Shown: positions 40,887 through 52,926 of the stretch, piece by piece
How the letters are laid out: every line of letters starts with the position of its first letter
Position numbering within the stretch: the stretch's first letter is position 1
DNA from: Botryllus schlosseri
Lineage: Eukaryota
NCBI GenBank assembly: GCA_051294905.1
Contig: CM119372.1
Coordinates: forward strand, 16,740,001-16,804,000
Direction of reading: 5' to 3'
Length of the DNA stretch: 64,000 nucleotides
The notes under the pieces: generated by a model
Databases searched by the model: none
Seen by the model: the letters and a program-made list of their open reading frames with translations, nothing else
What the model was told of the DNA's origin: nothing
Translations under genes and position numbers: made by a program

Positions 40887-43179
40887 ACTTAAACTGATAT
40901 TACTTATACATGACATATAAAGTGCGAGTTTCAGGGTCCAAATTTACGCTGATAACCTATTATTCTGTAGGTTGTCTAGTTTGATACTCGAGCAACAGTC
41001 AGCTAACATATGTAAGCTCCAATATATTCTGGTATCATACCCCCTCATCTTCAGATATTGGGGGACATTTTCTCATTGTCCATCTCTGACTATGTCAAGG
41101 TTTTTAGGGAGATTATTTAGATATTTTAGCTTTTTTTAATATCTGCTGTCGGACATGAAGATATGGCAGTGACACCTGTGTATCAGGGTTACATGTTCAT
41201 CCTTATCGTCCATAACCACTAGAAAACACAATATTTCAAAGCTGACAAATATGATGCAATCGTGCTCGTGATATTGCAACAATGCAATGTTTCTGTATTA
41301 CTCTTAATGTTTCTGTATTACCCACGAAGACTAACTGAGCGTGCAATTGTTACTGCACCTAAGACTTTGCCATTTTGGAGAATGGCACACTTTAGTATCC
41401 ATTTTGAGCCACCTATAGGCATTTGCCATTCACTTGACTTGAAAATCGGGATTCCCAACTCCTCCGGTAATCCATGGTAACGATATCTTGCCAATGCCAG
41501 TATGACGGCAATACACAAAGCTACCGAAAGTAGGCTTACGAAGAAAAGGCCGTTTCTCCTGATCGAAAGTGAGATACCTTCTCTACTTTGCCAAGTAATC
41601 TTTTCTCACTTCATAAGGATGATAAAAGCTACGAAGATGTCTGTTCCAAGTCCCAAAGCTTATGTCAGATCAATTACTCGTGTTGATGGACTACTCTACT
41701 TTCTGAATCAACTTCGATTCCAAAATTTTCATCATTTGGCTTGCTATCCCTGAGATCTTCATCTTGATCCAAATTATCGAGCGTATAGGAGTTTCAGGTT
41801 ACACTGGCTAAGCTGAAAGCGGCATTGGACCAAAAGCTGTTATTAGATGTCATGTTTATTTTTCTTGCCATATCCTGCAGTTTGAGTCGAATATGTGTGT
41901 GAAATATCCTCGGATAATTGCATCCTCTAACCAAAAATGGGTGAAACATCGGCCTAGATCGATACCAGTACCTTTTCCCTACATAATTCAATCGAGCCCT
42001 TGACTATATAACTTATTATATGGTAAAAGTGTGGATTTTTATATGATATGGAAAAGTAATATGGCTATATTCGGGAAAATTTGCATATTTTGGGCGTATG
42101 TCGTAGAGCAAAAAGTTGACGTGATAGAAGAGAACCAGTAGTATTTTTGAAATCAGCACCCTAAAATTATCCTAAATCAAGGTCCAAATCTATGTCAACA
42201 AATTTTTCGATCAAAATTGTTTCCCAGTGTTATTGGTATATAATTTCGCCCCTACACATCTCAAATATTGAACCTGACTCGGCTCATGCGGAAGAAATAA
42301 AAGTTTGATCATAAGCCGCGGCACGGTTTGGGCACAAAAAGCATGCGACACTTGTCTTAGTAGAAAGACTAGGCCCCGCCAGGTCTGTGAATTTCTCATT
42401 AATTCGCCAATGAAAATCACACCGTTTACCGAGCTTACACACGTACATAAACTTTACTATACTTGAGTGATCTATTCTGTAAAGGCCAGCCGCGCTATTT
42501 CCGCTTAATAATCCTACACGTTGCTACAAGTGAAAATGCAAATTACCATCTGGCACCACAAAAACAAACTGCTGACATGCATTGCGAGATCAGTGTATTC
42601 GGTTTATAATCAGCATAAAAAGACGCATTGCATTAGGTATGCGCAGTTCTGGCGATATACGATAACTAAAAATAAATGAGCTTGTCCTGAGAATAAGCCA
42701 TCGTAGAGTGTATATGTATATAGTTCGGACTTGAGTCGGAATTACTGAAATGTTTTTCGCTCGCCTGAGTGGGTTTCGAAGTAAAGATACACTTTGGGAT
42801 CAGATGCCAATAAAGATGAACGCTTATAGTTGACGTAAATTGAAACATAGAATTCGCTCGGCGTCAAAATCACCTTGAAGTCACGCGCGTGGATATTAGA
42901 ATTGAAATTATTCGATGCCTCGTATTACGACAGGTCTGAAGAGACGTTCCAGGCGCCAGATAAATATATCCATTAACTATATATTTACTATAAAAAAACG
43001 TTCCGGAGACCATATGATATAAATGTTTGGCGCCATATTCTCGATGGCTAATGGCAAACTTCGATGCTGATGCAACTCCATTGATACGAAGCGGTCGTCG
43101 GCTTCGGTCTTGTTGCCGTGTTCTCTTCAAGGTATTTTGTAACTTTCCGAGATTGTGAGCCGCATGCTCTTGTGAGATG

Positions 43180-43417
43180 TCAGTCACGAATGCAGTGACA
43201 TCCGGCGTTTACATCAAGAGGTTGATATGAAACCGTACAGTTCTGGCACGCTTCGCATTCAGGAACTGTGTAACTTTCGTTGTTAGCCACTCTTACCCAG
43301 GTTTCTACCGTGATAATTTTGGAATGGGCTAGGGGCAACACTTCCAATTCGCCAATACTGTTACGCTCGTAGCAATATCGACACAGACAGTTCGCGGAGC
43401 TTAATAATTGTGGATAT
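43180..43417 (-). CDS. IL17: IL-17 family gene g5, coding exon 3 of 3 (cystine knot); not in the ORF track
   Basis: Minus-strand acceptor ttattctttttag|A. Manual translation: (R)YPQLLSSANCLCRYCYERNSIGELEVLPLAHSKIITVETWVRVANNESYTVPECEACQNCTVSYQPLDVNAGCHCIRD*. TGA at 43182-43180. Confidence 0.92.
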
Positions 43418-44319
43418 CTAAAAAGAATAATTCAAATAAACAACACCATTATTTACGTCATTTTGTAATTGCGATCCCTTGCGATCCTTCAAAGCATGGG
43501 GATGTCAAACATACGGCCCGCGGGCCGGATACGGGCCACGGAACGATTTCATCTGGCCCGCTAGGCAATGCGTATTAAATGAAAAAAATGTTTGTATCAT
43601 CTAGCACATTTATATCGAGAGTCGAGGCTATTGATAAGAATCAATTCCACGTGAATAATCCTTCAGGACGGCAAACGTCGAAGACATTCCACATTCTAAG
43701 CGTCCAGCGTCAATATTGCCCTTCACACTTTTAATCATTAGCAGTGTGTCTTAACTTTTTTAGCGTTCTCACCCCTTGAGCTGACAGGAATGGTTTCTCG
43801 AATCCTCTATCCAAGATCGAAATACTTTGTTATACCGGCCACTAACGCTAGCGGTAGGCCCACGTAGGGTTTTCAACACAACTTCTGTGGATGTCAGGGA
43901 AAGGAGATATTTCAGCGACTACATGGAGTTATCAATAGGCCTATCATACACTTCGCACACCGTGATGTATGTATAGGGTCTAAATTTTTATCGCCTCCGA
44001 TCTCTTTGGCAATGCCGTTTACTTGTCGTAGGTGCTGCGAAACGTCATAGGTCTTGCTGTGTTATGGGGAGAAATTTAAGGCCGGCGCCGAAATGGCGGT
44101 GTTCGGTTCAAAACCTGGACTAGCCCATTCTCTCATAATTGCAAAAAGGCTGGATTCATTTCTGCAACTTATGTTATTATATAGCCTATTATTTTATCGG
44201 AGGAAAGGTATCCGAACTGAAAGAAACAATCCCCCTGAAGAAATCCAACCAATATTATTTCATTTTATGTTGTTTTATGCTATTTTTTATGTTGAAAAAT
44301 AATTTTGGTCCATCAATAG

Positions 44320-44876
44320 CAGGGTTGTAACCAAGTCACTATGTTCCGAGTCACAAGTCAATCTCACTTTTGTAGTTTTGACTCGAGTCAAGTCGAGTCA
44401 TTTTCAATCACCACCGACTCAAGTCCGAGCCAAAGTCATCAAGCAGAGGTTAGAGTCAGAGTCATGGTATTATGACTCGAGTCCGAGTCCAAGTCATTGT
44501 GTTGACCGCTCAGTTTCCAGTTCCAAGTCTTGTTAAACCCACTTTTATAACTCTGTTCGGTGATATCGAATGGTTCGCGTTTATAATATACTAATTTTCT
44601 TCACTTTTAACAGTTTCTTGTCGCATTTTCAAGTACCAGTACCAATAGACGAAATCCCAATAGGGTGGTTACTTTACTATTCTTCGAAATTACAATGAAC
44701 TGTCGGTCTCGGCCGTCTGAGTCTCGAGTCACATGACTTGGTTCAAGTCATGCGCAATGACTCGAGTCAATACACAGACTGACTCGAGTCGAGTCGAGTC
44801 ATTTCCGTATTTTCAGAAAATGACTGGGGTCAAGTCGAGTCATCAGAAAATCGTGACTCGAGTCATTACAACCCTG
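44320..44876 (+). mobile_element. hAT MITE family C copy 1 (557 bp; GACTCGAGTC subterminal repeats)
   Basis: TIRs cagggttgtaa/ttacaaccctg; perfect TSD atcaatag. Strand is assigned arbitrarily relative to copy 2. Confidence 0.9.
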
Positions 44877-45388
44877 ATCAATAGCGTATAATTTCACACT
44901 GCATCGTGTACCCCCTACTTTGGTGCTTTGTACCCCGAAGGGGCTCATGGACCCCTGGTTATAAACCCCTACTATTAGTCGGTGATAGTTTCTGAAAGTT
45001 ACAGTGACAATCAGCCCAGTTTTCTGAGTTTCTGAAAGAATGAACCAAAAGGTAGTTACTCATAAAGATGAAATGCCAATGCGAAACTGTCATATCATAT
45101 GACTCATATGTAACTTATATTGTGCTCAAAGAATATAATGCAAATATCTATGTTCGCATTGCTATATTATAACTTCTGACTCAGAAGGTTCTCGGATTCA
45201 CAAATCCATTCAGTCCATCAAATGTCTATGCGAACATTTCACAGTTCCTGAAACGGTGGAACTTTTTTGCTGCACTGTCATTGATAGATTTTCATAAAAC
45301 GTTTTTATTCGACAAGGCGCATGAGCTCAAAAACACCGCAACACTCGGAAATTTACTGATCGTCCCCGGAATGCTATCCCCTGTTGCA

Positions 45389-45460
45389 CGTGATCATGGT
45401 GCAAAAGACCAACAGGTGATAAGCGCCAAACTTTTCTTTTAATAAACAACAACAACAACA
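45389..45460 (+). mobile_element. 72-bp 5'-truncated retroposon insertion
   Basis: Ends AATAAA+(caa)n; flanked by the 13-bp direct repeat atcccctgttgca (45376-45388, 45461-45473). Confidence 0.7.
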
Positions 45461-45811
45461 ATCCCCTGTTGCATAGTTCTTTATCTCGTGTGGTACATAT
45501 TTGTAAATCTGTCCTGGCCCACACAATGTCCCAATAGTTTCTCTCGAAACTTTTGTATAAATAATTGTCCCTAATTTGGTATACCGCACATTCTAGTCCG
45601 TGACGCACCTGAACTTACAGCCGAAAAGCGTCACTCCCTTTTATCAATAATTCATCAAATGTGAGTTGTTGTTGATTGGGTTAAAATACGTCCTTCAATC
45701 CCCGAATTTGTAGTAAGTAGGTTAAATATCTTGTTGCCGTCATAATGAAAACGCTGGGTCAATGTCGCCGCATCACGATTCACGACTAAACGAAGTAATC
45801 ATACTGGCAGT

Positions 45812-47008
45812 CAGACTTGGACAACTAGAAAATTTTCAGCTATTCCAAATTAGATTAGAATTAGAACTAGAGCTGCACAGTTGTTTTTCAAATTAGATTG
45901 GAATTAGAATTAGAGCTGCACGATTTTTCCAAATTAGAATAAAATTAGAATTACAGCTACACATTTTATTTTAATTAAATTAGAATTAGAAGTTAAATCA
46001 CTGAATTCGCAAAAACTTGGAAATTGAATGAGATTGTGAATGAGAAATTAATAATACAGCAAAAATAAAGTCCAGTTCATATCAAATGACAGTGCATTAA
46101 CGTCTGTACAACAAGCTGCTTGGCTCGTTTTGTACTATACCAGGGGTCACCAACACGCGGGCCACATACGGTCGGCCAGCTGATTTGTGATTTTAGAAGA
46201 ACGCGAAGTAAAGATTTTGAAATGCTGAAATTGGTTTCAGTTTCAAATTATTTTAGTTGTTTCAAAATTAGCTATGCCTGTGCCCAACAACACTATTCCT
46301 CACTAGCTGAAACGGATTCGGCGATGGCAACAGCATTACATAGATGGAGAGTCAGCTGATAGGAGCATATTGTCTTGACGTGCAATGGCCCAAGCACTAC
46401 CAAGACCAATAAGCTTAGAAAATGGTCTGGGACTTTCCCACAAGATCAATATTTAGGGTGAAATATTCTTTCAGCTGGTTTCATGTCTGGCTAGTCGCAA
46501 TATCAATTCATTAGTCGCTGAAAAGCGTGATCAGGCATCGTAAACAGCTCATAGTTGAAAATAAAATGAAGTTGATAATCATAATATTTCTTGTTGTATT
46601 TGTACTTCTTTATTAAAATTACTTCTTTTGTGGTATAACCATGTCCATCGCCCACGCAAGTGAGCACGGCGTTGTACTAACATAAAGTTTTAAAAACGTG
46701 ATCGCAACTAAAATGTTGTTCGCAGACTACAAGCTACTATACCAGTATGGCTATTATTATTCGTCACAATAACTACTATGATTGTACGGGCGGTGTAAGT
46801 AATGCGATGGTTTCTTGGTAGCAAAAAGCCGCGGACAAAGAGGCATTTTTAGGAAACCAATAAATTAGATTAGAACTAAAATTAGAGCACAAAAAAATTA
46901 ACAAGTTAGATTAGAATTAGAATTAGAGCATAAAAACATTTCACAAATTGCATTTCGCTCTAATTTAGGGAAATTGGACAACTAGAATTATCTAATTGTC
47001 TAAGTCGG
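45812..47008. mobile_element. hAT-type element with (TTAGAA)n-like subterminal arrays
   Basis: Imperfect TIRs cagacttggacaa/ttgtctaagtcgg; TSD ctggcagt/ctcgcagt (7/8); aattagaattag arrays at both ends; a Charlie-type end nested at about 46141. Confidence 0.7.
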
Positions 47009-49029
47009 CTCGCAGTTTACAGTTACTCAGAGGTTAAAGCCACCGTTTTAGTGATTTGTAACTGTATTCAATCGACTAACTCCATTGTCTATGCATAAAT
47101 ATGTTTCTACATTCGATCCCGAATAATCAAGCATTCCCCTGAAAAACGAAGGTAGGGATTTGGAGATAACATTTTGGCAACATTCCACAGGTCCGGCCCA
47201 TAAGCGATTATAAAGTTCGAATCCGGCCCGCGGTGCAATTCGACTTTGAATCCTTTCCTTACAGGTCACCAATTGATATTTCTGCCTTGCGTTCATACGT
47301 ATGACAGTATTCAAGAAGTTACTTCGAACGTGCATAACACCGGACGGGTGGAGGGATAGCGCGAAATGTCATAAAATCTCCCAAACTAGTCGAAGCTGAC
47401 AGAATATTGCATTATTCGCGCGAGATTTTTCCCCATTCTACCACGATCATCTGTGAAGTCCAACTATTATTATTATATGTTAAATTATCATTATTATATG
47501 TTCATCAAATTGACGTTATGCTACATGGGTGGGGCATTATACCCTACAAAATAGAGCATCCCAGTACAATGCTATAGACGCTTCTCCGCTTCGTCATGGC
47601 GAAACTGATCTTTTGAAAAAAGCTTCATCCACAAATTTAGCTAAACAAAGCAACATATTATGATAAGTTAAAACATAAGGATGGAAATTCTTAAATGACA
47701 GTCAGCGGGATAGCCTTTAGCCTATATTCGCCGGGAATGCATTCTGGGTGAGCTCATAAATGGCTACTGTACTCCATTTTTACCCGTATCCGTTACAGAA
47801 CGCTTCACTGCATATCAAACACGACCTAGGGCATTGGCAGTTGTCAAAAACTATCAGCTGGAGCTGTGCACATCTTATCCTGAAAGTATGACGACATAGA
47901 TATTTTTATTTAATGAAGCCAAAGAAAAATTGCGTGTGTTGTAGATATGAATTGAAATTCTACTAATCTTATTAGTATAGTAATCCCTTTGGGGGCATAA
48001 TCTTAATTAAATTATTACATATTTGCATTCGCACGAAAAGATAGGCCAACGCACTCGAGGGACAGCCAGATAATTAATCAATTGAAAACAGGCTATCGAC
48101 ACTATCGTAAGTATTTGCCTAAATTTCTCACTCAATACCACGTTTTTTTGTTATAGGACCAGACGACGATCCAATGGGAAACCGAACTTTACGGGGTAAA
48201 ACACCCGCAGTGTACAGCATTGCACTGGCGTAAAGTTTTAGGAACGTGATTGTTAAACTGTGTGGTCTGTTTTATCTCGATATTGAATCATGCGGCTCGC
48301 AGCATCACAGAATTTTGAAAAATGGCCCACGACCCGTTTTGAGTTGGCTACCCCTGCTTTAATGCAATGGTCCATAACCTTTCTTTCAAATCGACCCTTA
48401 TTTCAAGAGAAAATGAAATTGAAACGAACTTGCGACCCATATAATTTTGGGAATACGAGCGTAAATATGGGTGTGTACGACAACTATTCCCCACTTGACA
48501 ACCACGGAGGACAGTATAGACGTAGTACGAAAACCAGAAAATTGTGCAATTATCTAAGCATTTTATTAAGTATAGGGGCCAGAGGTGTAACGAATAAGAT
48601 TTGTGTTGGTTACCCCAGGCCCCACGCTAATTTACCTAGGCTTACTAACAGCTGCAAAAAGAGAAATACAGTTTAGGAGATGATATGAGAGTTCCTACGA
48701 AATCGGTAATTGAGAGAAGAAAAATCGTCAATGAATGACAATCGGCTTATTCATCATATTAGCGAGTATTGCAGTAGTGAATATCAGGTGAGCATTTGCT
48801 GGCAAACAATTTATTCTGATAATAGATCGATTTTTTATAAAAGGTATACCTACAGAAATTCAGTAGCCTATTCATGTTTGTATCTTTATTTTTTGATGCC
48901 CTCACAGCCCTCGTGACAGAATTTGACGTATAACGTAGGCCTATGTGTTTTCGAATATGTCTATCTTGTGGATAAAATTTTAATGTAATTTGTCGATTTT
49001 ACATTACATGTACCCTTCTTTTATATTAC

Positions 49030-49265
49030 GGTTTGGTATATCGGGTTTACCGATTGTGGGCTGACCAGAGCTCAGTTCTCTCGCGCAATGATTTGACCTA
49101 AATTTTACGCCCTTCCTGCCGCATCCGTATACCCAATACTCCTTTACCTGAGCTTGGGACCGGCCCTAGTTTCACTAATCTACGACTGGGTTCGTTGGGA
49201 GGCAGCCACGGGGAATTGAACACGATAGTATCTGGTTTGCGAGACTGAGGTACGCGTACCCTCTG
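49030..49265 (-). mobile_element. Possible degenerate SINE/non-LTR fragment
   Basis: B-box-like gtgttcaattcc about 30 nt after a weak A box, followed by a GC-rich body; no second copy in the window. Confidence 0.3.
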
Positions 49266-49501
49266 CTCATAACACGCAGTGCGCGTGTCCGGGGCTATAG
49301 ACACTCTGATGAGACATATCATATGTGTTGATAAATAATTGGCTTCTCGTAAGTCGCGTATACCAGATCCCACCTAATTTAAAACATGTTTCCCGAGACA
49401 CACTTCAGAATCGTCGCGAGCCGCAAGTGGTACATATACATTGTACGTACAGCTTTGCCGTACCACATTCTGTCTTTAATCAAATCGCTACGTGGTCCGT
49501 G

Positions 49502-50299
49502 GACATATGAGCATGCAGGGTTGAAATGACTCATGTCACGATTTTCTGATGACTCGACTTGACTCGAGTCAATCTGTGTATTGACTCGACTTGGACTCGA
49601 GTCATTGCGCATGACTCGAAGCAAGTCATACCACTCGAGACTCAGACGGCCAAGACCGATATTTCATTGTAATTTCGCAGAACAGTAAAGTAACCACCCT
49701 ATTGGGATTTCGTCTATTGGTACTGGTACTTTAAAATGCGACCAGAAACTGTTACAACTGAGGAAAATTAGTATTTTAGAAATGGGAACCATTCGATATC
49801 AGCAAACAGAGTTATAAAAGTGGGTTTAACAAGACTTTAACTGGAAACTGAGCAGTCAATACAATGACTTGGACTCGGACTCGAGTCATAATACCATGAC
49901 TCGGACTCGTACCTCTGCTCGATGACTTGGACTCGGACTTGACTCGGTGGCGAATTGAAAATTACTCGACTTGGCTCGAGTCAAAACTGTAAAAGTGAGA
50001 TTGACTTATGACTCGGAGCTTTATAACTTTGTTACAACCCTGTGAGCATGCGATACTTTGGCATGCGACAATTGGGTATGTGGGTTAAATTACGGGTTAG
50101 AATAGGTTAGGGTTGGATTTTATGGTTGGGTTAGGGTTAGGCTTATGCTTGGGGTTAGGATATATATAAGGGGTAATTTCAGGATTATGTTTCGGGTTAG
50201 GGTAAGTTTTTGGGCTACAAAGTCACATGATGAAGTAACGCATGCTGAAGTGTCCCATGCTGAAGTGTCGTTTTCCGTTGTGTCGCATGCTCATATGTC
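49502..50299. mobile_element. Inverted-repeat element with a degenerate TTAGGG core, interrupted by the family C MITE
   Basis: Removing 49516-50050 restores gacatatgagcatgcga, the exact reverse complement of tcgcatgctcatatgtc (50283-50299). GGTTAG-rich tract at about 50085-50208. Confidence 0.7.
49516..50042 (-). mobile_element. hAT MITE family C copy 2 (527 bp), inverted relative to copy 1
   Basis: Reverse complement is collinear with 44320..44876; perfect TSD tgagcatg. Confidence 0.9.
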
Positions 50300-50376
50300 G
50301 GGAAACCATTTTCTTCAGATGCTATATTCTCCGCTTCAAAGAATTCCTTTGGAGACAATATTGATGAATAACACAC

Positions 50377-50467
50377 CTGTTCCATTGAAAGTCCAACGTA
50401 TAATTCCACGGAGAAAAACTTCGAGTTTCGTAACTGCTTAGATTCTCATGAAGGGGGCATGACGGTA
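50377..50467 (-). CDS. IL17: IL-17 family gene g5, coding exon 2 of 3 (91 nt)
   Basis: Acceptor cgcattttttcag|TA, phase 1 in. Reads (L)PSCPLHENLSSYETRSFSPWNYTLDFQWN-AG|gtgtgt, phase 2 out, matching both neighbouring exons. Confidence 0.88.
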
Positions 50468-50978
50468 CTGAAAAAATGCGCACACACATTAGTGAAATCA
50501 ATAAACCAGCCATTGAATTCAATATAATCATAAGATGGTCATCGATCGCCCATCCCAGATCACGGTGAGCAACACTTGTGCGTATACTGACTCTTGTATT
50601 TTTTATGATACTCACAGTTCGCGTAATACCATGTTCTAACATACTGCTATAACCCACTGGTTTTCAAACGATTTCATTCCAGGACCCCTTCAGTGATATT
50701 TAAGCTGACATCCACATAAGAAGGAGCTTTCTGGTGACCCAGGTGCATGTTAAATAAAATAACAAGCGGGCACCACGGCATTAAAGCTCTAGCACGGAGC
50801 TGTCTAAGCTTTTTGCTAATGTGGGTCGCATTCCATTGGTCACTTGCGCCACAATAAAAAGCAGTCGTCAGTTTCGGTTGTGGCAGCTTGCGGAATATTT
50901 ATCATGATATTTCAAGATCGGGATTACGATTGATTTGAAATGACTATTGTCGCTTTGGAGCTTCGAGTCGGTATAGAC

Positions 50979-51879
50979 CAGGGGTGGCCAACCTTTTTGG
51001 CCAAAGTGCCGCATGTGGTTTTACGAACAATTGCACGGGTCACCTAAGTATTGATGATCTTCTGTTTATGGATAGATTAGGTAACGGTGAAAGCGAAGAC
51101 TTACGTTACTACGCACCAAAATCGCTGACATTTATGTCATGAAAAACCAGTGTTCGCTCATGTTCTATCCGCGCGACGCGCGAAAATATTTCAAAGTTGA
51201 CGAATGAATCCGGTCAATAATATCGGTACTTGCATATTGCTTGTTTTGCGGGTCCCAATTGTACCGCGTGGATCAGATTGCAATGGCAGGTTTCCGCTAA
51301 CGCACCTTGACCATTTTGGGTCAACACTTTATCGATCGATCTTTCTGGGAGCTCAATCGTGGAGTCACAGGCTTTCCTTCTACCACATTTTATATATCGT
51401 GGTGTATCCTAACTTGACGATGACTGGCGCCGAAATGCCTGTCCCGCGTGCTGCACACCACTAGACTGAAACATCCCACAGGATTGCGGTGATATAGGGG
51501 ATATTCTGTTCTCCCATATTTGAGAATACAATTAGACTCAATTCTGTATATTAGGCTATGTTTTTCGGGAGGGTTACTAAAAAGAATAAATCTAGAGCTA
51601 CGTAATCGCAGGAAGTATTTTCATATACAAATATTTACGTAAATTTGTGGGACATGGGCCTTTTCGTCTCCCTGGCTACTCCAATGCATCGAAACTGCTT
51701 CTTCTTTAGTCACCAGCACCCCAAATGTCGCGGTAGGACTAATCACAGCTTTGGTTGACCTTGAAAGTTCATAAAACTTGACGTTGGCAATTCATTTTTC
51801 TGTAATTTAACTGTAATTTCGATAATTATCATGCGGGCCACTCAAATCTTTCCCGCGTGCCACGGGTTGGTCACCCCTA
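50979..51879. mobile_element. Non-autonomous hAT/Buster element (901 bp) in g5 intron 1
   Basis: TIRs caggggtggccaac/gttggtcaccccta; perfect TSD gtatagac. Confidence 0.88.
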
Positions 51880-52332
51880 GTATAGACTGTCGCGGGTCGT
51901 ACGAAATCGTCCCGCTGGCCCTATTTTGGGCCCACGGCTTTAGGATATACTTATCCTTCGTGCGAGGTTCTAAATCGCCGAATTCCCCCGCTAGGAGAAT
52001 GATATTGTAATGTAACAAGAATTCCCACCACATTAGGAACCTCTGTTATTACAAAAACATATTCACGTCAAAATGTAAATGTGTAAGGGTTTCCCTTGAT
52101 CCTTGAATGAAGAGATAAGAATATGGAACCATAATGGATGGCAGCGGTATGTCACTTGGAAATGTGATGTGAATTGCATTTGTACCTTATAGAGGGGTTA
52201 TTTCGCGGTATTTACATTTATCTCATTATTATTATATCATCATATGTTGTATAAGGAAAATCATGTTTACATCTAAAGTTCTAAACGATTCACGGATAGG
52301 AAATGTCAGTAGCGTCGGAGAGGTATACTTAC

Positions 52333-52618
52333 GCTCGTCTGCCGGGCGTTTTATAGCCTTCGTGCTCTTTTTAACCCTTTTATGTCCTTTGCCATGATGA
52401 ATACACCTACTGCCTGTCACTGTATGTGTGTCTGAGATTGATTCCGTTTGATTTGACCATATCTCCTGAGAGTTATTTACTAGCGAAATGTTCGTGATGA
52501 CCAAATTATCCCCAGTTCCGTCTTTTACGGCATACGGGAAGCCATCCACCGCAAAGCTCAATGATACGACCAGACAGGCGCAGAACGTGCCGAGAGACTT
52601 TAGCTTACTACGTTCCAT
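52333..52618 (-). CDS. IL17: IL-17 family gene g5, coding exon 1 of 3 (signal peptide and N-terminal region)
   Basis: Signal peptide MERSKLKSLGTFCACLVVSLSFAVDG, N-glycosylation sequons NIS/NNS/NQT, and a consensus donor GAC GAG C|gtaagt (phase 1) that joins the 91-nt exon in frame. Confidence 0.85.
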
Positions 52619-52630
52619 CTGTTCGATATT

Positions 52631-52926
52631 CTATTGACATGTAAATCAAACGCAAATAAATGTCATCATCGGTTGAGATATTTCGTTTCCTGCGAGCACA
52701 GCGAGCACTACACATGCCGTGGATTGCCGCAAACTTCGGTACTGCATAGCATGAACGAAAAGGTGCGTTTAATCGCATTATGCGTGACAAGCGCGCCGTA
52801 AGCATCTTATTTTCCTTGCACTAACGCGTAAAGTTGTTGACAATTCCAGCCGCGAAGAGATTTGTCACACCAACACTAGCGATGACGAAAATCGTTAATG
52901 AGAAACGCACTGTACTAGTTCCTTAC
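52631..52926 (-). other. Candidate 5'UTR intron of g5
   Basis: Strong minus-strand donor gag|gtaagg at 52926. The acceptor is either aatag (52631, 12-nt leader) or the cag directly before the ATG (52619). Confidence 0.4.

What the first reader, a model, noticed from the sequence alone, without database searches (positions are those of the whole stretch)
43180..52618. Hidden fifth IL-17 gene on the minus strand with an extra intron
Seen: the knot exon (43180-43417) has no start codon and is missing from the ORF track. The 91-nt middle exon is buried in an unrelated-looking ORF, and exon 1 looks like an orphan secreted ORF. Splice phases (1, then 2) join the three into a 204-aa IL-17 over 9.4 kb. 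Unlike g1-g4 it has a second coding intron and lacks the C-x11-C module. Inference: it is the most divergent member, possibly the oldest, and is likely missed or fragmented by automated annotation.
Basis: partly seen in the sequence, partly recalled or inferred. Interest (0 to 1): 0.78.

Follow-up and report, generated by a model that had tools for sequence, protein, structure and literature searches.

The report
Divergent three-exon IL-17 cytokine gene
A real, transcribed gene for a fast-evolving member of the interleukin-17 family of immune signalling proteins lies on the opposite strand of a tandem IL-17 cluster in what is probably a sea-squirt genome. It is an ordinary new member of a gene family already known to vary in sequence and intron number.

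Summary
Three minus-strand exons (52618-52333, 50467-50377, 43417-43180) have GT-AG borders, intron phases 1 and 2, and join into a 204-aa reading frame.

RNA evidence confirms both junctions:
- Exon 1 to exon 2 is seen in raw RNA-seq reads and in contigs from two other studies.
- Exon 2 to exon 3 is seen in a contig of a fourth study, whose overhang reads exactly into exon 3.

The product belongs to the IL-17 family:
- It keeps the SPW...NR|YPQ motif and every residue invariant in the genome's other 19 knot exons.
- A profile of nine paralogues scores the joined domain at 58.9 bits, against 10.5 for the best of 2000 shuffles.
- A confident model has only IL-17A, IL-17F and IL-25 among its top 50 solved-structure matches.

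Intron 2 sits at the same place and phase as the single coding intron of g1-g4. Intron 1 is extra, and the C-x11-C module is absent.

- "Oldest": g5 has the longest branch but groups, with moderate support, with a sixth IL-17 gene (g6) just beyond the window. That fits a fast-evolving local duplicate.
- "Fifth": the cluster has six genes.
- "Missed by annotation": untestable here.

Variable intron number and unannotated IL-17 genes are already documented in invertebrates. Interest is low.

The parts
52333..52618 (-). Exon 1 (coding from the ATG at 52618). It encodes a signal-peptide-like N-terminus, three N-x-S/T sequons and a basic stretch. It has no similarity to other IL-17 genes and is single copy in the genome.
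   Evidence: RNA contigs and reads cover it; single copy; nothing found in the protein collection.
50468..52332 (-). Intron 1 (phase 1, 1865 nt, GT..AG). This is the extra coding intron, which g1-g4 and g6 lack.
   Evidence: Joint 50467/52333 in X19 raw reads and in X1 and X2 contigs; splice sites.
50377..50467 (-). Exon 2 (91 nt). It encodes the conserved Cys-Pro and the RSxSPW...NR start of the IL-17 domain.
   Evidence: an X2 contig covers 50377-50467 with no differences; the BLASTP match to g6 starts here; single copy.
43418..50376 (-). Intron 2 (phase 2, 6959 nt). It splits the Arg codon AG|A before YPQ, at the same place and phase as the single coding intron of g1-g4, g6 and four other paralogues.
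   Evidence: the X3 contig overhang at 50377 reads into exon 3.
43180..43417 (-). Exon 3, coding part: the cystine-knot body of the IL-17 domain (YPQ...CLCRYC...GCHC) and the TGA stop.
   Evidence: Pfam IL17 at 21.8 bits over profile positions 16-81 and 22.9 bits; all invariant columns kept; AF2 pLDDT 90.9; PDB top 50 all IL-17 family.
42582..43179 (-). Probable 3' UTR of about 600 nt. The end point is inferred, not seen.
   Evidence: The 1216-nt X1 contig leaves 836 nt beyond exon 2, which reaches about 42582 if colinear. An ATTATAAA lies about 20 nt upstream of that point. RNA-like runs hold 40-78% of the words of 43000-43500.
49516..50350 (.). Repeated element inside intron 2. It is not part of the gene product.
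   Evidence: Word depth in the thousands in all runs, with many internal rearranged joints.

Best explanation
g5 is an intact, transcribed, single-copy gene of the IL-17 cytokine family. Three coding exons are spliced into an mRNA of at least 1.2 kb that encodes a 204-aa precursor. The precursor has a signal-peptide-like N-terminus, a poorly constrained glycosylated and basic linker (exon 1), and a C-terminal IL-17 domain of about 106 aa split between exons 2 and 3. It most likely arose by tandem duplication from a g6-like two-exon neighbour. The whole N-terminal half, including the C-x11-C module, was then replaced by an unrelated first exon spliced in just before the conserved Cys-Pro, and the domain diverged quickly. 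By analogy with studied IL-17s it would be secreted, form a dimer of two-disulfide cystine-knot subunits, and signal through SEFIR-domain IL-17 receptors, which the genome encodes. Shown here: exons, junctions, transcription, family membership by sequence, predicted fold and shared intron. Inferred: secretion, dimerisation, receptor signalling and the order of evolutionary events.
For: Gene model and frame. Spliced RNA in four studies: backed by word shares. Domain homology runs across the exon 2/3 junction: BLASTP to g6 gives 33% over 106 aa, E 6e-12, and 27-32% to g1-g4. An HMM of nine paralogues scores 58.9 bits, against 10.5 for the best of 2000 shuffles. g5 keeps all invariant knot-exon residues P2, C10, C12, C15, S32, C73 and C75. 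Pfam's only hit is IL17. The AF2 model has pLDDT 90.9, and its top 50 PDB matches are all IL-17A, IL-17F or IL-25, with TM 0.53-0.68. The phase-2 intron is shared with g1-g4, g6, L012, L017, L020 and L022. g5 and g6 are sisters at 79/83 support. SEFIR exons are present in the genome.
Against: Pfam IL17 on exon 3 alone falls just under the gathering score (21.8-22.9 against 24 bits); the joined domain could not be submitted by reference. The family-typical GCID after the knot cysteines reads YCYE in g5. No orthologue was found in other organisms. An allele in run X1 differs from the window by five non-synonymous and three synonymous changes in exon 1, which shows weak constraint there. Expression is low: a handful of junction reads in a 6% sample of X19. 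The g5+g6 pairing has only moderate support and g5 sits on a long branch.
Confidence: 0.88

Rival explanations
1. g5 is the oldest, basal IL-17 lineage of this genome. Its two-intron structure would then be ancestral (the structure most vertebrate IL-17 genes have), and g1-g4 and g6 would have lost the first intron.
For: g5 has the longest branch and falls at the midpoint root in both trees. Most vertebrate IL-17 genes have two introns (29 of 34, PMC4517768).
Against: Midpoint rooting on a long branch says nothing about age, and no outgroup was available. The best tree pairs g5 with the adjacent g6 (79/83), and g6 is also the best BLASTP hit. Exon 1 has no relative anywhere. Four paralogues on other chromosomes also show the shared phase-2 intron; their upstream structure was not examined. 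Whether intron 1 matches a vertebrate intron position was not tested.
Confidence: 0.1
2. g5 is a transcribed but decaying duplicate, an incipient pseudogene without cytokine function.
For: Extreme divergence. The conserved GCID is replaced. Non-synonymous changes outnumber synonymous ones between alleles in exon 1. Expression is low. No orthologues were detected.
Against: The 204-codon frame is intact across three exons with canonical splice sites. All seven family-invariant residues and the SPW motif are kept. Exon 2 is identical in the other allele seen. The fold is predicted with confidence. Spliced RNA is found in four independent studies.
Confidence: 0.08
3. The product is a different cystine-knot factor (neurotrophin, Spaetzle, coagulogen or TGF-beta-like) and not an IL-17.
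For: The Pfam score is under threshold. IL-17 and neurotrophin folds are related (PMC11087794, title and abstract only).
Against: IL17 is the only Pfam hit. All top 50 PDB matches are IL-17 family. The gene has the SPW...NR|YPQ motif and shares its intron with neighbouring genes that score 44-58 bits on IL17. The paralogue profile gives 58.9 bits.
Confidence: 0.02

Closest known systems
g6, the neighbouring IL-17 gene of the same genome (G000:C2, knot exon 16809208-16809429, minus strand; L035)
   Same: Same strand and same cluster. It is the best BLASTP match (33% over the whole domain) and the sister in the best tree. Both have YPQ after the shared phase-2 intron, and both keep the Cys-Pro and RSxSPW motifs.
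   Different: g6 has two coding exons, a long first exon with the C-x11-C module, and the family-typical GCID. g5 has an unrelated first exon, an extra phase-1 intron, no C-x11-C module, and YCYE.
Ciona intestinalis/robusta IL-17 genes (CiIL17-1 to -3; three genes cited from Vizzini et al. 2015, and 7 IL-17 entries under two count columns in the table of PMC8353272)
   Same: Tunicate IL-17 ligands. The chordate-type pattern, in which serines stand where non-chordate invertebrates have the third knot disulfide (PMC4517768 abstract), fits the SPW serine and the invariant S32 here. That match is my inference.
   Different: This genome has at least 24 knot exons over the Pfam cut-off, far more than reported for Ciona.
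Human IL-17A, IL-17F and IL-25 (PDB 7uwn, 1jpy, 7uwl and others)
   Same: Predicted fold: TM 0.53-0.68 and 19-24% identity over 72-80 columns. The four knot cysteines follow C-x4-C...C-x-C. Most vertebrate IL-17 genes have two introns (PMC4517768).
   Different: g5 has extra cysteines (CLC, Cys-Pro and a three-cysteine loop) and an unrelated N-terminal region. Orthology to any vertebrate subfamily is not shown, and correspondence of intron positions was not tested.
Sea urchin SpIL17 genes (PMC5457136)
   Same: Tandem arrays of fast-diverging IL-17 genes. Some are three-exon genes with distinct first exons (SpIL17-4a). Only 22 of 34 homologues matched existing gene models, so missed IL-17 genes are a known annotation problem.
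   Different: Different phylum. In SpIL17-1 the IL-17 domain lies in one exon, whereas here it is split by a phase-2 intron.

Membership tests
IL-17 cytokine family (Pfam PF06083) | Match to the Pfam IL17 profile at or above the gathering score (24 bits) | tested here: inconclusive
   Exon 3 alone scores 21.8 bits, E 2.6e-4, over profile positions 16-81, and 22.9 bits in the genome scan. Profile positions 1-15 lie in exon 2. The joined domain has no reference, so it was not submitted.
IL-17 cytokine family (Pfam PF06083) | Significant similarity of the whole domain to undisputed family members | tested here: met
   A profile of nine paralogues (their knot exons score 32-58 bits on Pfam IL17) gives g5 58.9 bits, against 10.5 for the best of 2000 shuffles. 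BLASTP to g6 gives E 6e-12.
IL-17 cytokine family (Pfam PF06083) | Four knot cysteines (C-x4-C ... C-x-C), with serines in place of the third disulfide as in chordates | tested here: met
   C10, C15, C73, C75 and S32 are invariant in 20 knot exons including g5. The SPW serine is present in exon 2. The serine rule is taken from the abstract of PMC4517768.
IL-17 cytokine family (Pfam PF06083) | RSxSPW ... NR-[FIY]P motif at the start of the domain | tested here: met
   g5 reads RSFSPWNYTLDFQWNR|YPQ.
IL-17 cytokine family (Pfam PF06083) | IL-17 fold: two long beta-hairpins tied by the knot | tested here: met
   The AF2 model of exon 3 has pLDDT 90.9 with strands at 14-18, 24-44 and 62-77. Foldseek's top 50 PDB matches are all IL-17A, IL-17F or IL-25, at probability 0.95-1.0. 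E-values are only 0.07-0.4 because the model is short.
IL-17 cytokine family (Pfam PF06083) | Secretion signal | tested here: inconclusive
   Read by eye only. The N-terminus has a basic start, a 12-residue hydrophobic core and S-F-A before the likely cut. No signal-peptide predictor was available.
IL-17 cytokine family (Pfam PF06083) | Dimer that binds an IL-17 receptor and signals through SEFIR/Act1 | not testable with these tools
   SEFIR-domain exons exist in the genome (8 over the cut-off), so partners are available. No binding test was run.
Local IL-17 cluster lineage (g1-g4, g6) | Phase-2 intron splitting the Arg codon between NR and [FIY]PQ | tested here: met
   AG|A in g1-g5 and CG|G-type in g6, all phase 2.
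Local IL-17 cluster lineage (g1-g4, g6) | Single long first coding exon with a C-x11-C (C-x13-C in g3) module | tested here: not met
   g5's first exon is unrelated and has no such module. tblastn found no relic of it in the locus; only exons 2 and 3 hit.

The most novel reading that the evidence does not exclude
g5 is a neofunctionalised ligand. After duplication from a g6-like gene it swapped its whole N-terminal pro-region for a new exon and remodelled the receptor-facing surface (GCID to YCYE, plus a three-cysteine loop). This would have let it pair with one of the very divergent, lineage-specific IL-17-receptor-like genes that other notes of this scan report in the same genome. It would be an example of ligand-receptor co-diversification in a tunicate.
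Probability: 0.12. Interest if true: 0.4.

Novelty: new member of a known kind. Interest (0 to 1): 0.18.

Why it matters
The result gives a transcript-backed gene model for a divergent IL-17 paralogue that exon-by-exon homology searches would score below threshold. It also gives a worked case of how an IL-17 gene can change its N-terminal exon and gain an intron while keeping the family's phase-2 intron. This helps curate the large IL-17 repertoire of this probable tunicate genome. It does not change what is known about IL-17 biology: variable intron number, tandem expansion, rapid divergence and incomplete annotation of invertebrate IL-17 genes are all published (PMC4517768, PMC8353272, PMC5457136).

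Tried and rejected
1. Protein collection search with exon 1: nothing found.
2. Search of 1.84 billion representatives with exon 3: only three long repetitive proteins (P0001-P0003) matched residues 25-73 in several stretches. I read these as cysteine-rich chance matches. No IL-17 orthologue appeared.
3. Using the collection to ask whether g5 is annotated: rejected. g2 found only a 54% Logan relative (P0004), so this genome's annotated proteins are not in the collection and absence means nothing.
4. tblastn of g1-g4 and g6 against the g5 locus, looking for a relic of the C-x11-C module in the introns: only exons 2 and 3 hit. The best upstream match (g4, E 0.67) is not significant.
5. Paralogues of exon 1 or exon 2 elsewhere in the genome: none.
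6. Foldseek E-values against PDB are above 0.001 because the model has only 78 residues. I rely on the exclusive IL-17 ranking and the TM-scores, not on the E-values.
8. Intron 2 (6959 nt) is longer than the 6000-letter limit of the single read-laying run, so junction 2 rests on a contig overhang and not on a listed joint. The stretch 43418-46750 was not examined with reads.
Full report
**The observation**

- On the minus strand, an ATG at 52618 opens a frame that runs to 52333 and is followed by GTAAGT.
- TTTTTTCAG precedes 50467, and the 91-nt exon ends CAG|GTGTGT at 50377.
- TTCTTTTTAG precedes 43417, and the frame ends in TGA at 43182-43180.
- The exons measure 286, 91 and 238 nt. That gives intron phases 1 and 2 and an uninterrupted 204-codon frame.

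The three pieces look as described in an ORF list. Exon 1 sits in a 128-aa ORF, and exon 2 sits in a 111-aa ORF whose upstream part is unrelated. Exon 3's open frame has only five codons before the acceptor and no early start.

**Transcription**

Small contig sets that are probably transcriptomes (X1-X9, five studies) hold 6-34% of the words of 50300-52700 and 40-78% of the words of 43000-43500. That is the pattern expected for exons without introns.

Four runs were laid on 46751-52750:
- The joint 50467/52333 (ends CT..AC on the plus strand, so GT..AG on the minus strand) appears in raw RNA-seq reads of X19.
- The same joint appears in a 1216-nt contig of X1 and in a contig of X2, written as 50467/52335 with two letters between. 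This is the same junction with a synonymous GAG>GAA allele at 52334.
- A contig of X3 stops matching at 50377 and continues for 255 letters. The 30 letters shown are the reverse complement of the first bases of exon 3.

In X3 the coverage outside the repeat is confined to the exons. X1 also holds low-depth intronic contigs, from pre-mRNA or DNA carry-over.

The X1 contig leaves 836 nt beyond exon 2. If colinear, that gives a 3' UTR of about 600 nt ending near 42582, about 20 nt after an ATTATAAA. This end point is an inference.

**What it encodes**

The window holds four plus-strand IL-17 genes. Each has a first exon ending ...SPW...D-P-[ND]-R and a second exon beginning [FI]PQ...C-L-C-x-G-C...G-C-[HY]-C. 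g5 reads RSFSPWNYTLDFQWNR|YPQLLSSANCLCRYC...GCHC.

In g1-g4 the Arg codon is split AG|A by a phase-2 intron, exactly as in g5's second intron. The same holds for g6 and for four paralogues on other chromosomes. Intron 2 is therefore the family's intron, and intron 1 is the extra one.

Evidence that g5 belongs to the family:
- **Pfam.** Exon 3 alone finds only IL17, at 21.8 bits, just below the 24-bit cut-off. The first 15 profile positions lie in exon 2.
- **Invariant residues.** In an alignment of 20 knot exons of this genome, g5 keeps every invariant residue: P2, C10, C12, C15, S32, C73 and C75.
- **Pairwise similarity.** BLASTP of the joined protein matches g6 at 33% over 106 residues (E 6e-12) and g1-g4 at 27-32%. 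The g6 and g2 matches begin at or next to the first residue of exon 2 and run across the splice junction; those to g1, g3 and g4 start a few residues either side of that point.
- **Paralogue profile.** A profile of nine paralogue domains scores g5 at 58.9 bits. The best of 2000 shuffles reaches 10.5.
- **Predicted fold.** An AlphaFold2 model of exon 3 has mean pLDDT 90.9. Its 50 best Foldseek matches in the PDB are all IL-17A, IL-17F or IL-25, with TM 0.53-0.68. The E-values are weak because the model is short.

Exon 1 has a signal-peptide-like start, several N-x-S/T sequons and a basic stretch. It has no relative in the genome or in the protein collections. The X1 allele differs from the window in exon 1 by five non-synonymous and three synonymous changes, four of them in codons 75-80. 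Exon 2 is identical in the other allele seen. Exon 1 thus looks like a weakly constrained leader and linker.

**History**

A sixth IL-17 gene (g6) lies about 5.2 kb beyond the window's end, on the same strand as g5. It has two coding exons and a C-x11-C module.

g5 has by far the longest terminal branch: 3.26 against a median of 0.61 on knot exons, and 7.5 against 0.9 on whole domains. In the best whole-domain tree it is sister to g6, with support 79/83.

No trace of the C-x11-C region remains in g5's introns.

The most economical reading is a tandem duplicate of a g6-like gene. It acquired a new first exon, spliced in just before the conserved Cys-Pro, and then diverged quickly. 'Oldest' is not supported, but it cannot be excluded without an outgroup.

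**Likely function (inferred)**

The product is probably a secreted, glycosylated IL-17-type dimeric ligand that acts on SEFIR-domain receptors. Eight SEFIR exons over the cut-off are present in the genome. Nothing here tests secretion, dimerisation or binding.

**Context and novelty**

The genome has 495.5 Mb in 219 contigs and at least 24 IL-17 knot exons over the Pfam cut-off. A cellulose-synthase exon fits the sea-squirt origin suggested in other notes of this scan.

The relevant points are already published:
- Invertebrate IL-17 genes usually have 0-3 introns, and vertebrate ones mostly two (PMC4517768).
- Mussel IL-17 genes range from 1 to 7 exons, and missing signal-peptide exons are attributed to misannotation (PMC8353272).
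- Only 22 of 34 sea-urchin IL-17 homologues matched existing gene models, and SpIL17-4a has three exons with alternative first exons (PMC5457136).

g5 is therefore a well-supported new member of a known and notoriously variable family. It is not a new kind of gene.

Whether the public annotation misses it could not be checked. The collections searched do not contain this genome's annotated proteins.

Noticed in passing
L035:5175-8038 (G000:C2:16809175-16812038, minus strand; about 5.2-8 kb beyond the window's end): A sixth IL-17 gene (g6) of the cluster. It has two coding exons, a signal peptide, a C-x11-C module and the phase-2 intron after FDQHR. It is the nearest relative of g5.
   Followed up: partly
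G000:C2:21.73-21.85 Mb, C2:13.89-13.93 Mb, C16:3.76-3.78 Mb, C8:1.11, 11.85 Mb and others (L001-L030): At least 24 IL-17 knot exons over the Pfam cut-off across the genome, including a tight array of about nine near-identical copies at C2:21.73-21.85 Mb. This is a much larger repertoire than the 3-7 reported for Ciona. I found no paper describing such an expansion in a tunicate.
   Followed up: partly
window 49516-50350: A repeated element inside g5's intron 2. Word depth is in the thousands in all RNA-like runs, with many internal 'skips' and 'goes back' joints. One loose end at 50141 runs into (TTAGG)n-like repeats. It is probably an abundant transcribed repeat or mobile element.
   Followed up: no
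The spacing of the module is not fixed within the cluster.
   Followed up: yes
window 52380-52395: The allele in run X1 carries four clustered non-synonymous differences (H75R, G78R, H79N, K80T) in the basic stretch of g5's exon 1. Polymorphism between individuals is high (about 2.4% in exon 1).
   Followed up: partly
window 42870-43187 (minus strand): The 105-aa GTG-initiated ORF that overlaps g5's stop codon lies wholly in the inferred 3' UTR and is most likely spurious.
   Followed up: no
G000:C9:15029126-15029521 (minus strand): An exon matches Pfam Cellulose_synt (26.3 bits, over the cut-off). Among animals this is expected only in tunicates, so it supports the sea-squirt origin.
   Followed up: no
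P0004 (276 aa, Logan contig of 1377 nt): The only database relative of g2's first exon is 54% identical and carries Pfam IL17. It is probably an orthologue or paralogue from a related species' transcriptome. It would be useful for dating the cluster.
   Followed up: no
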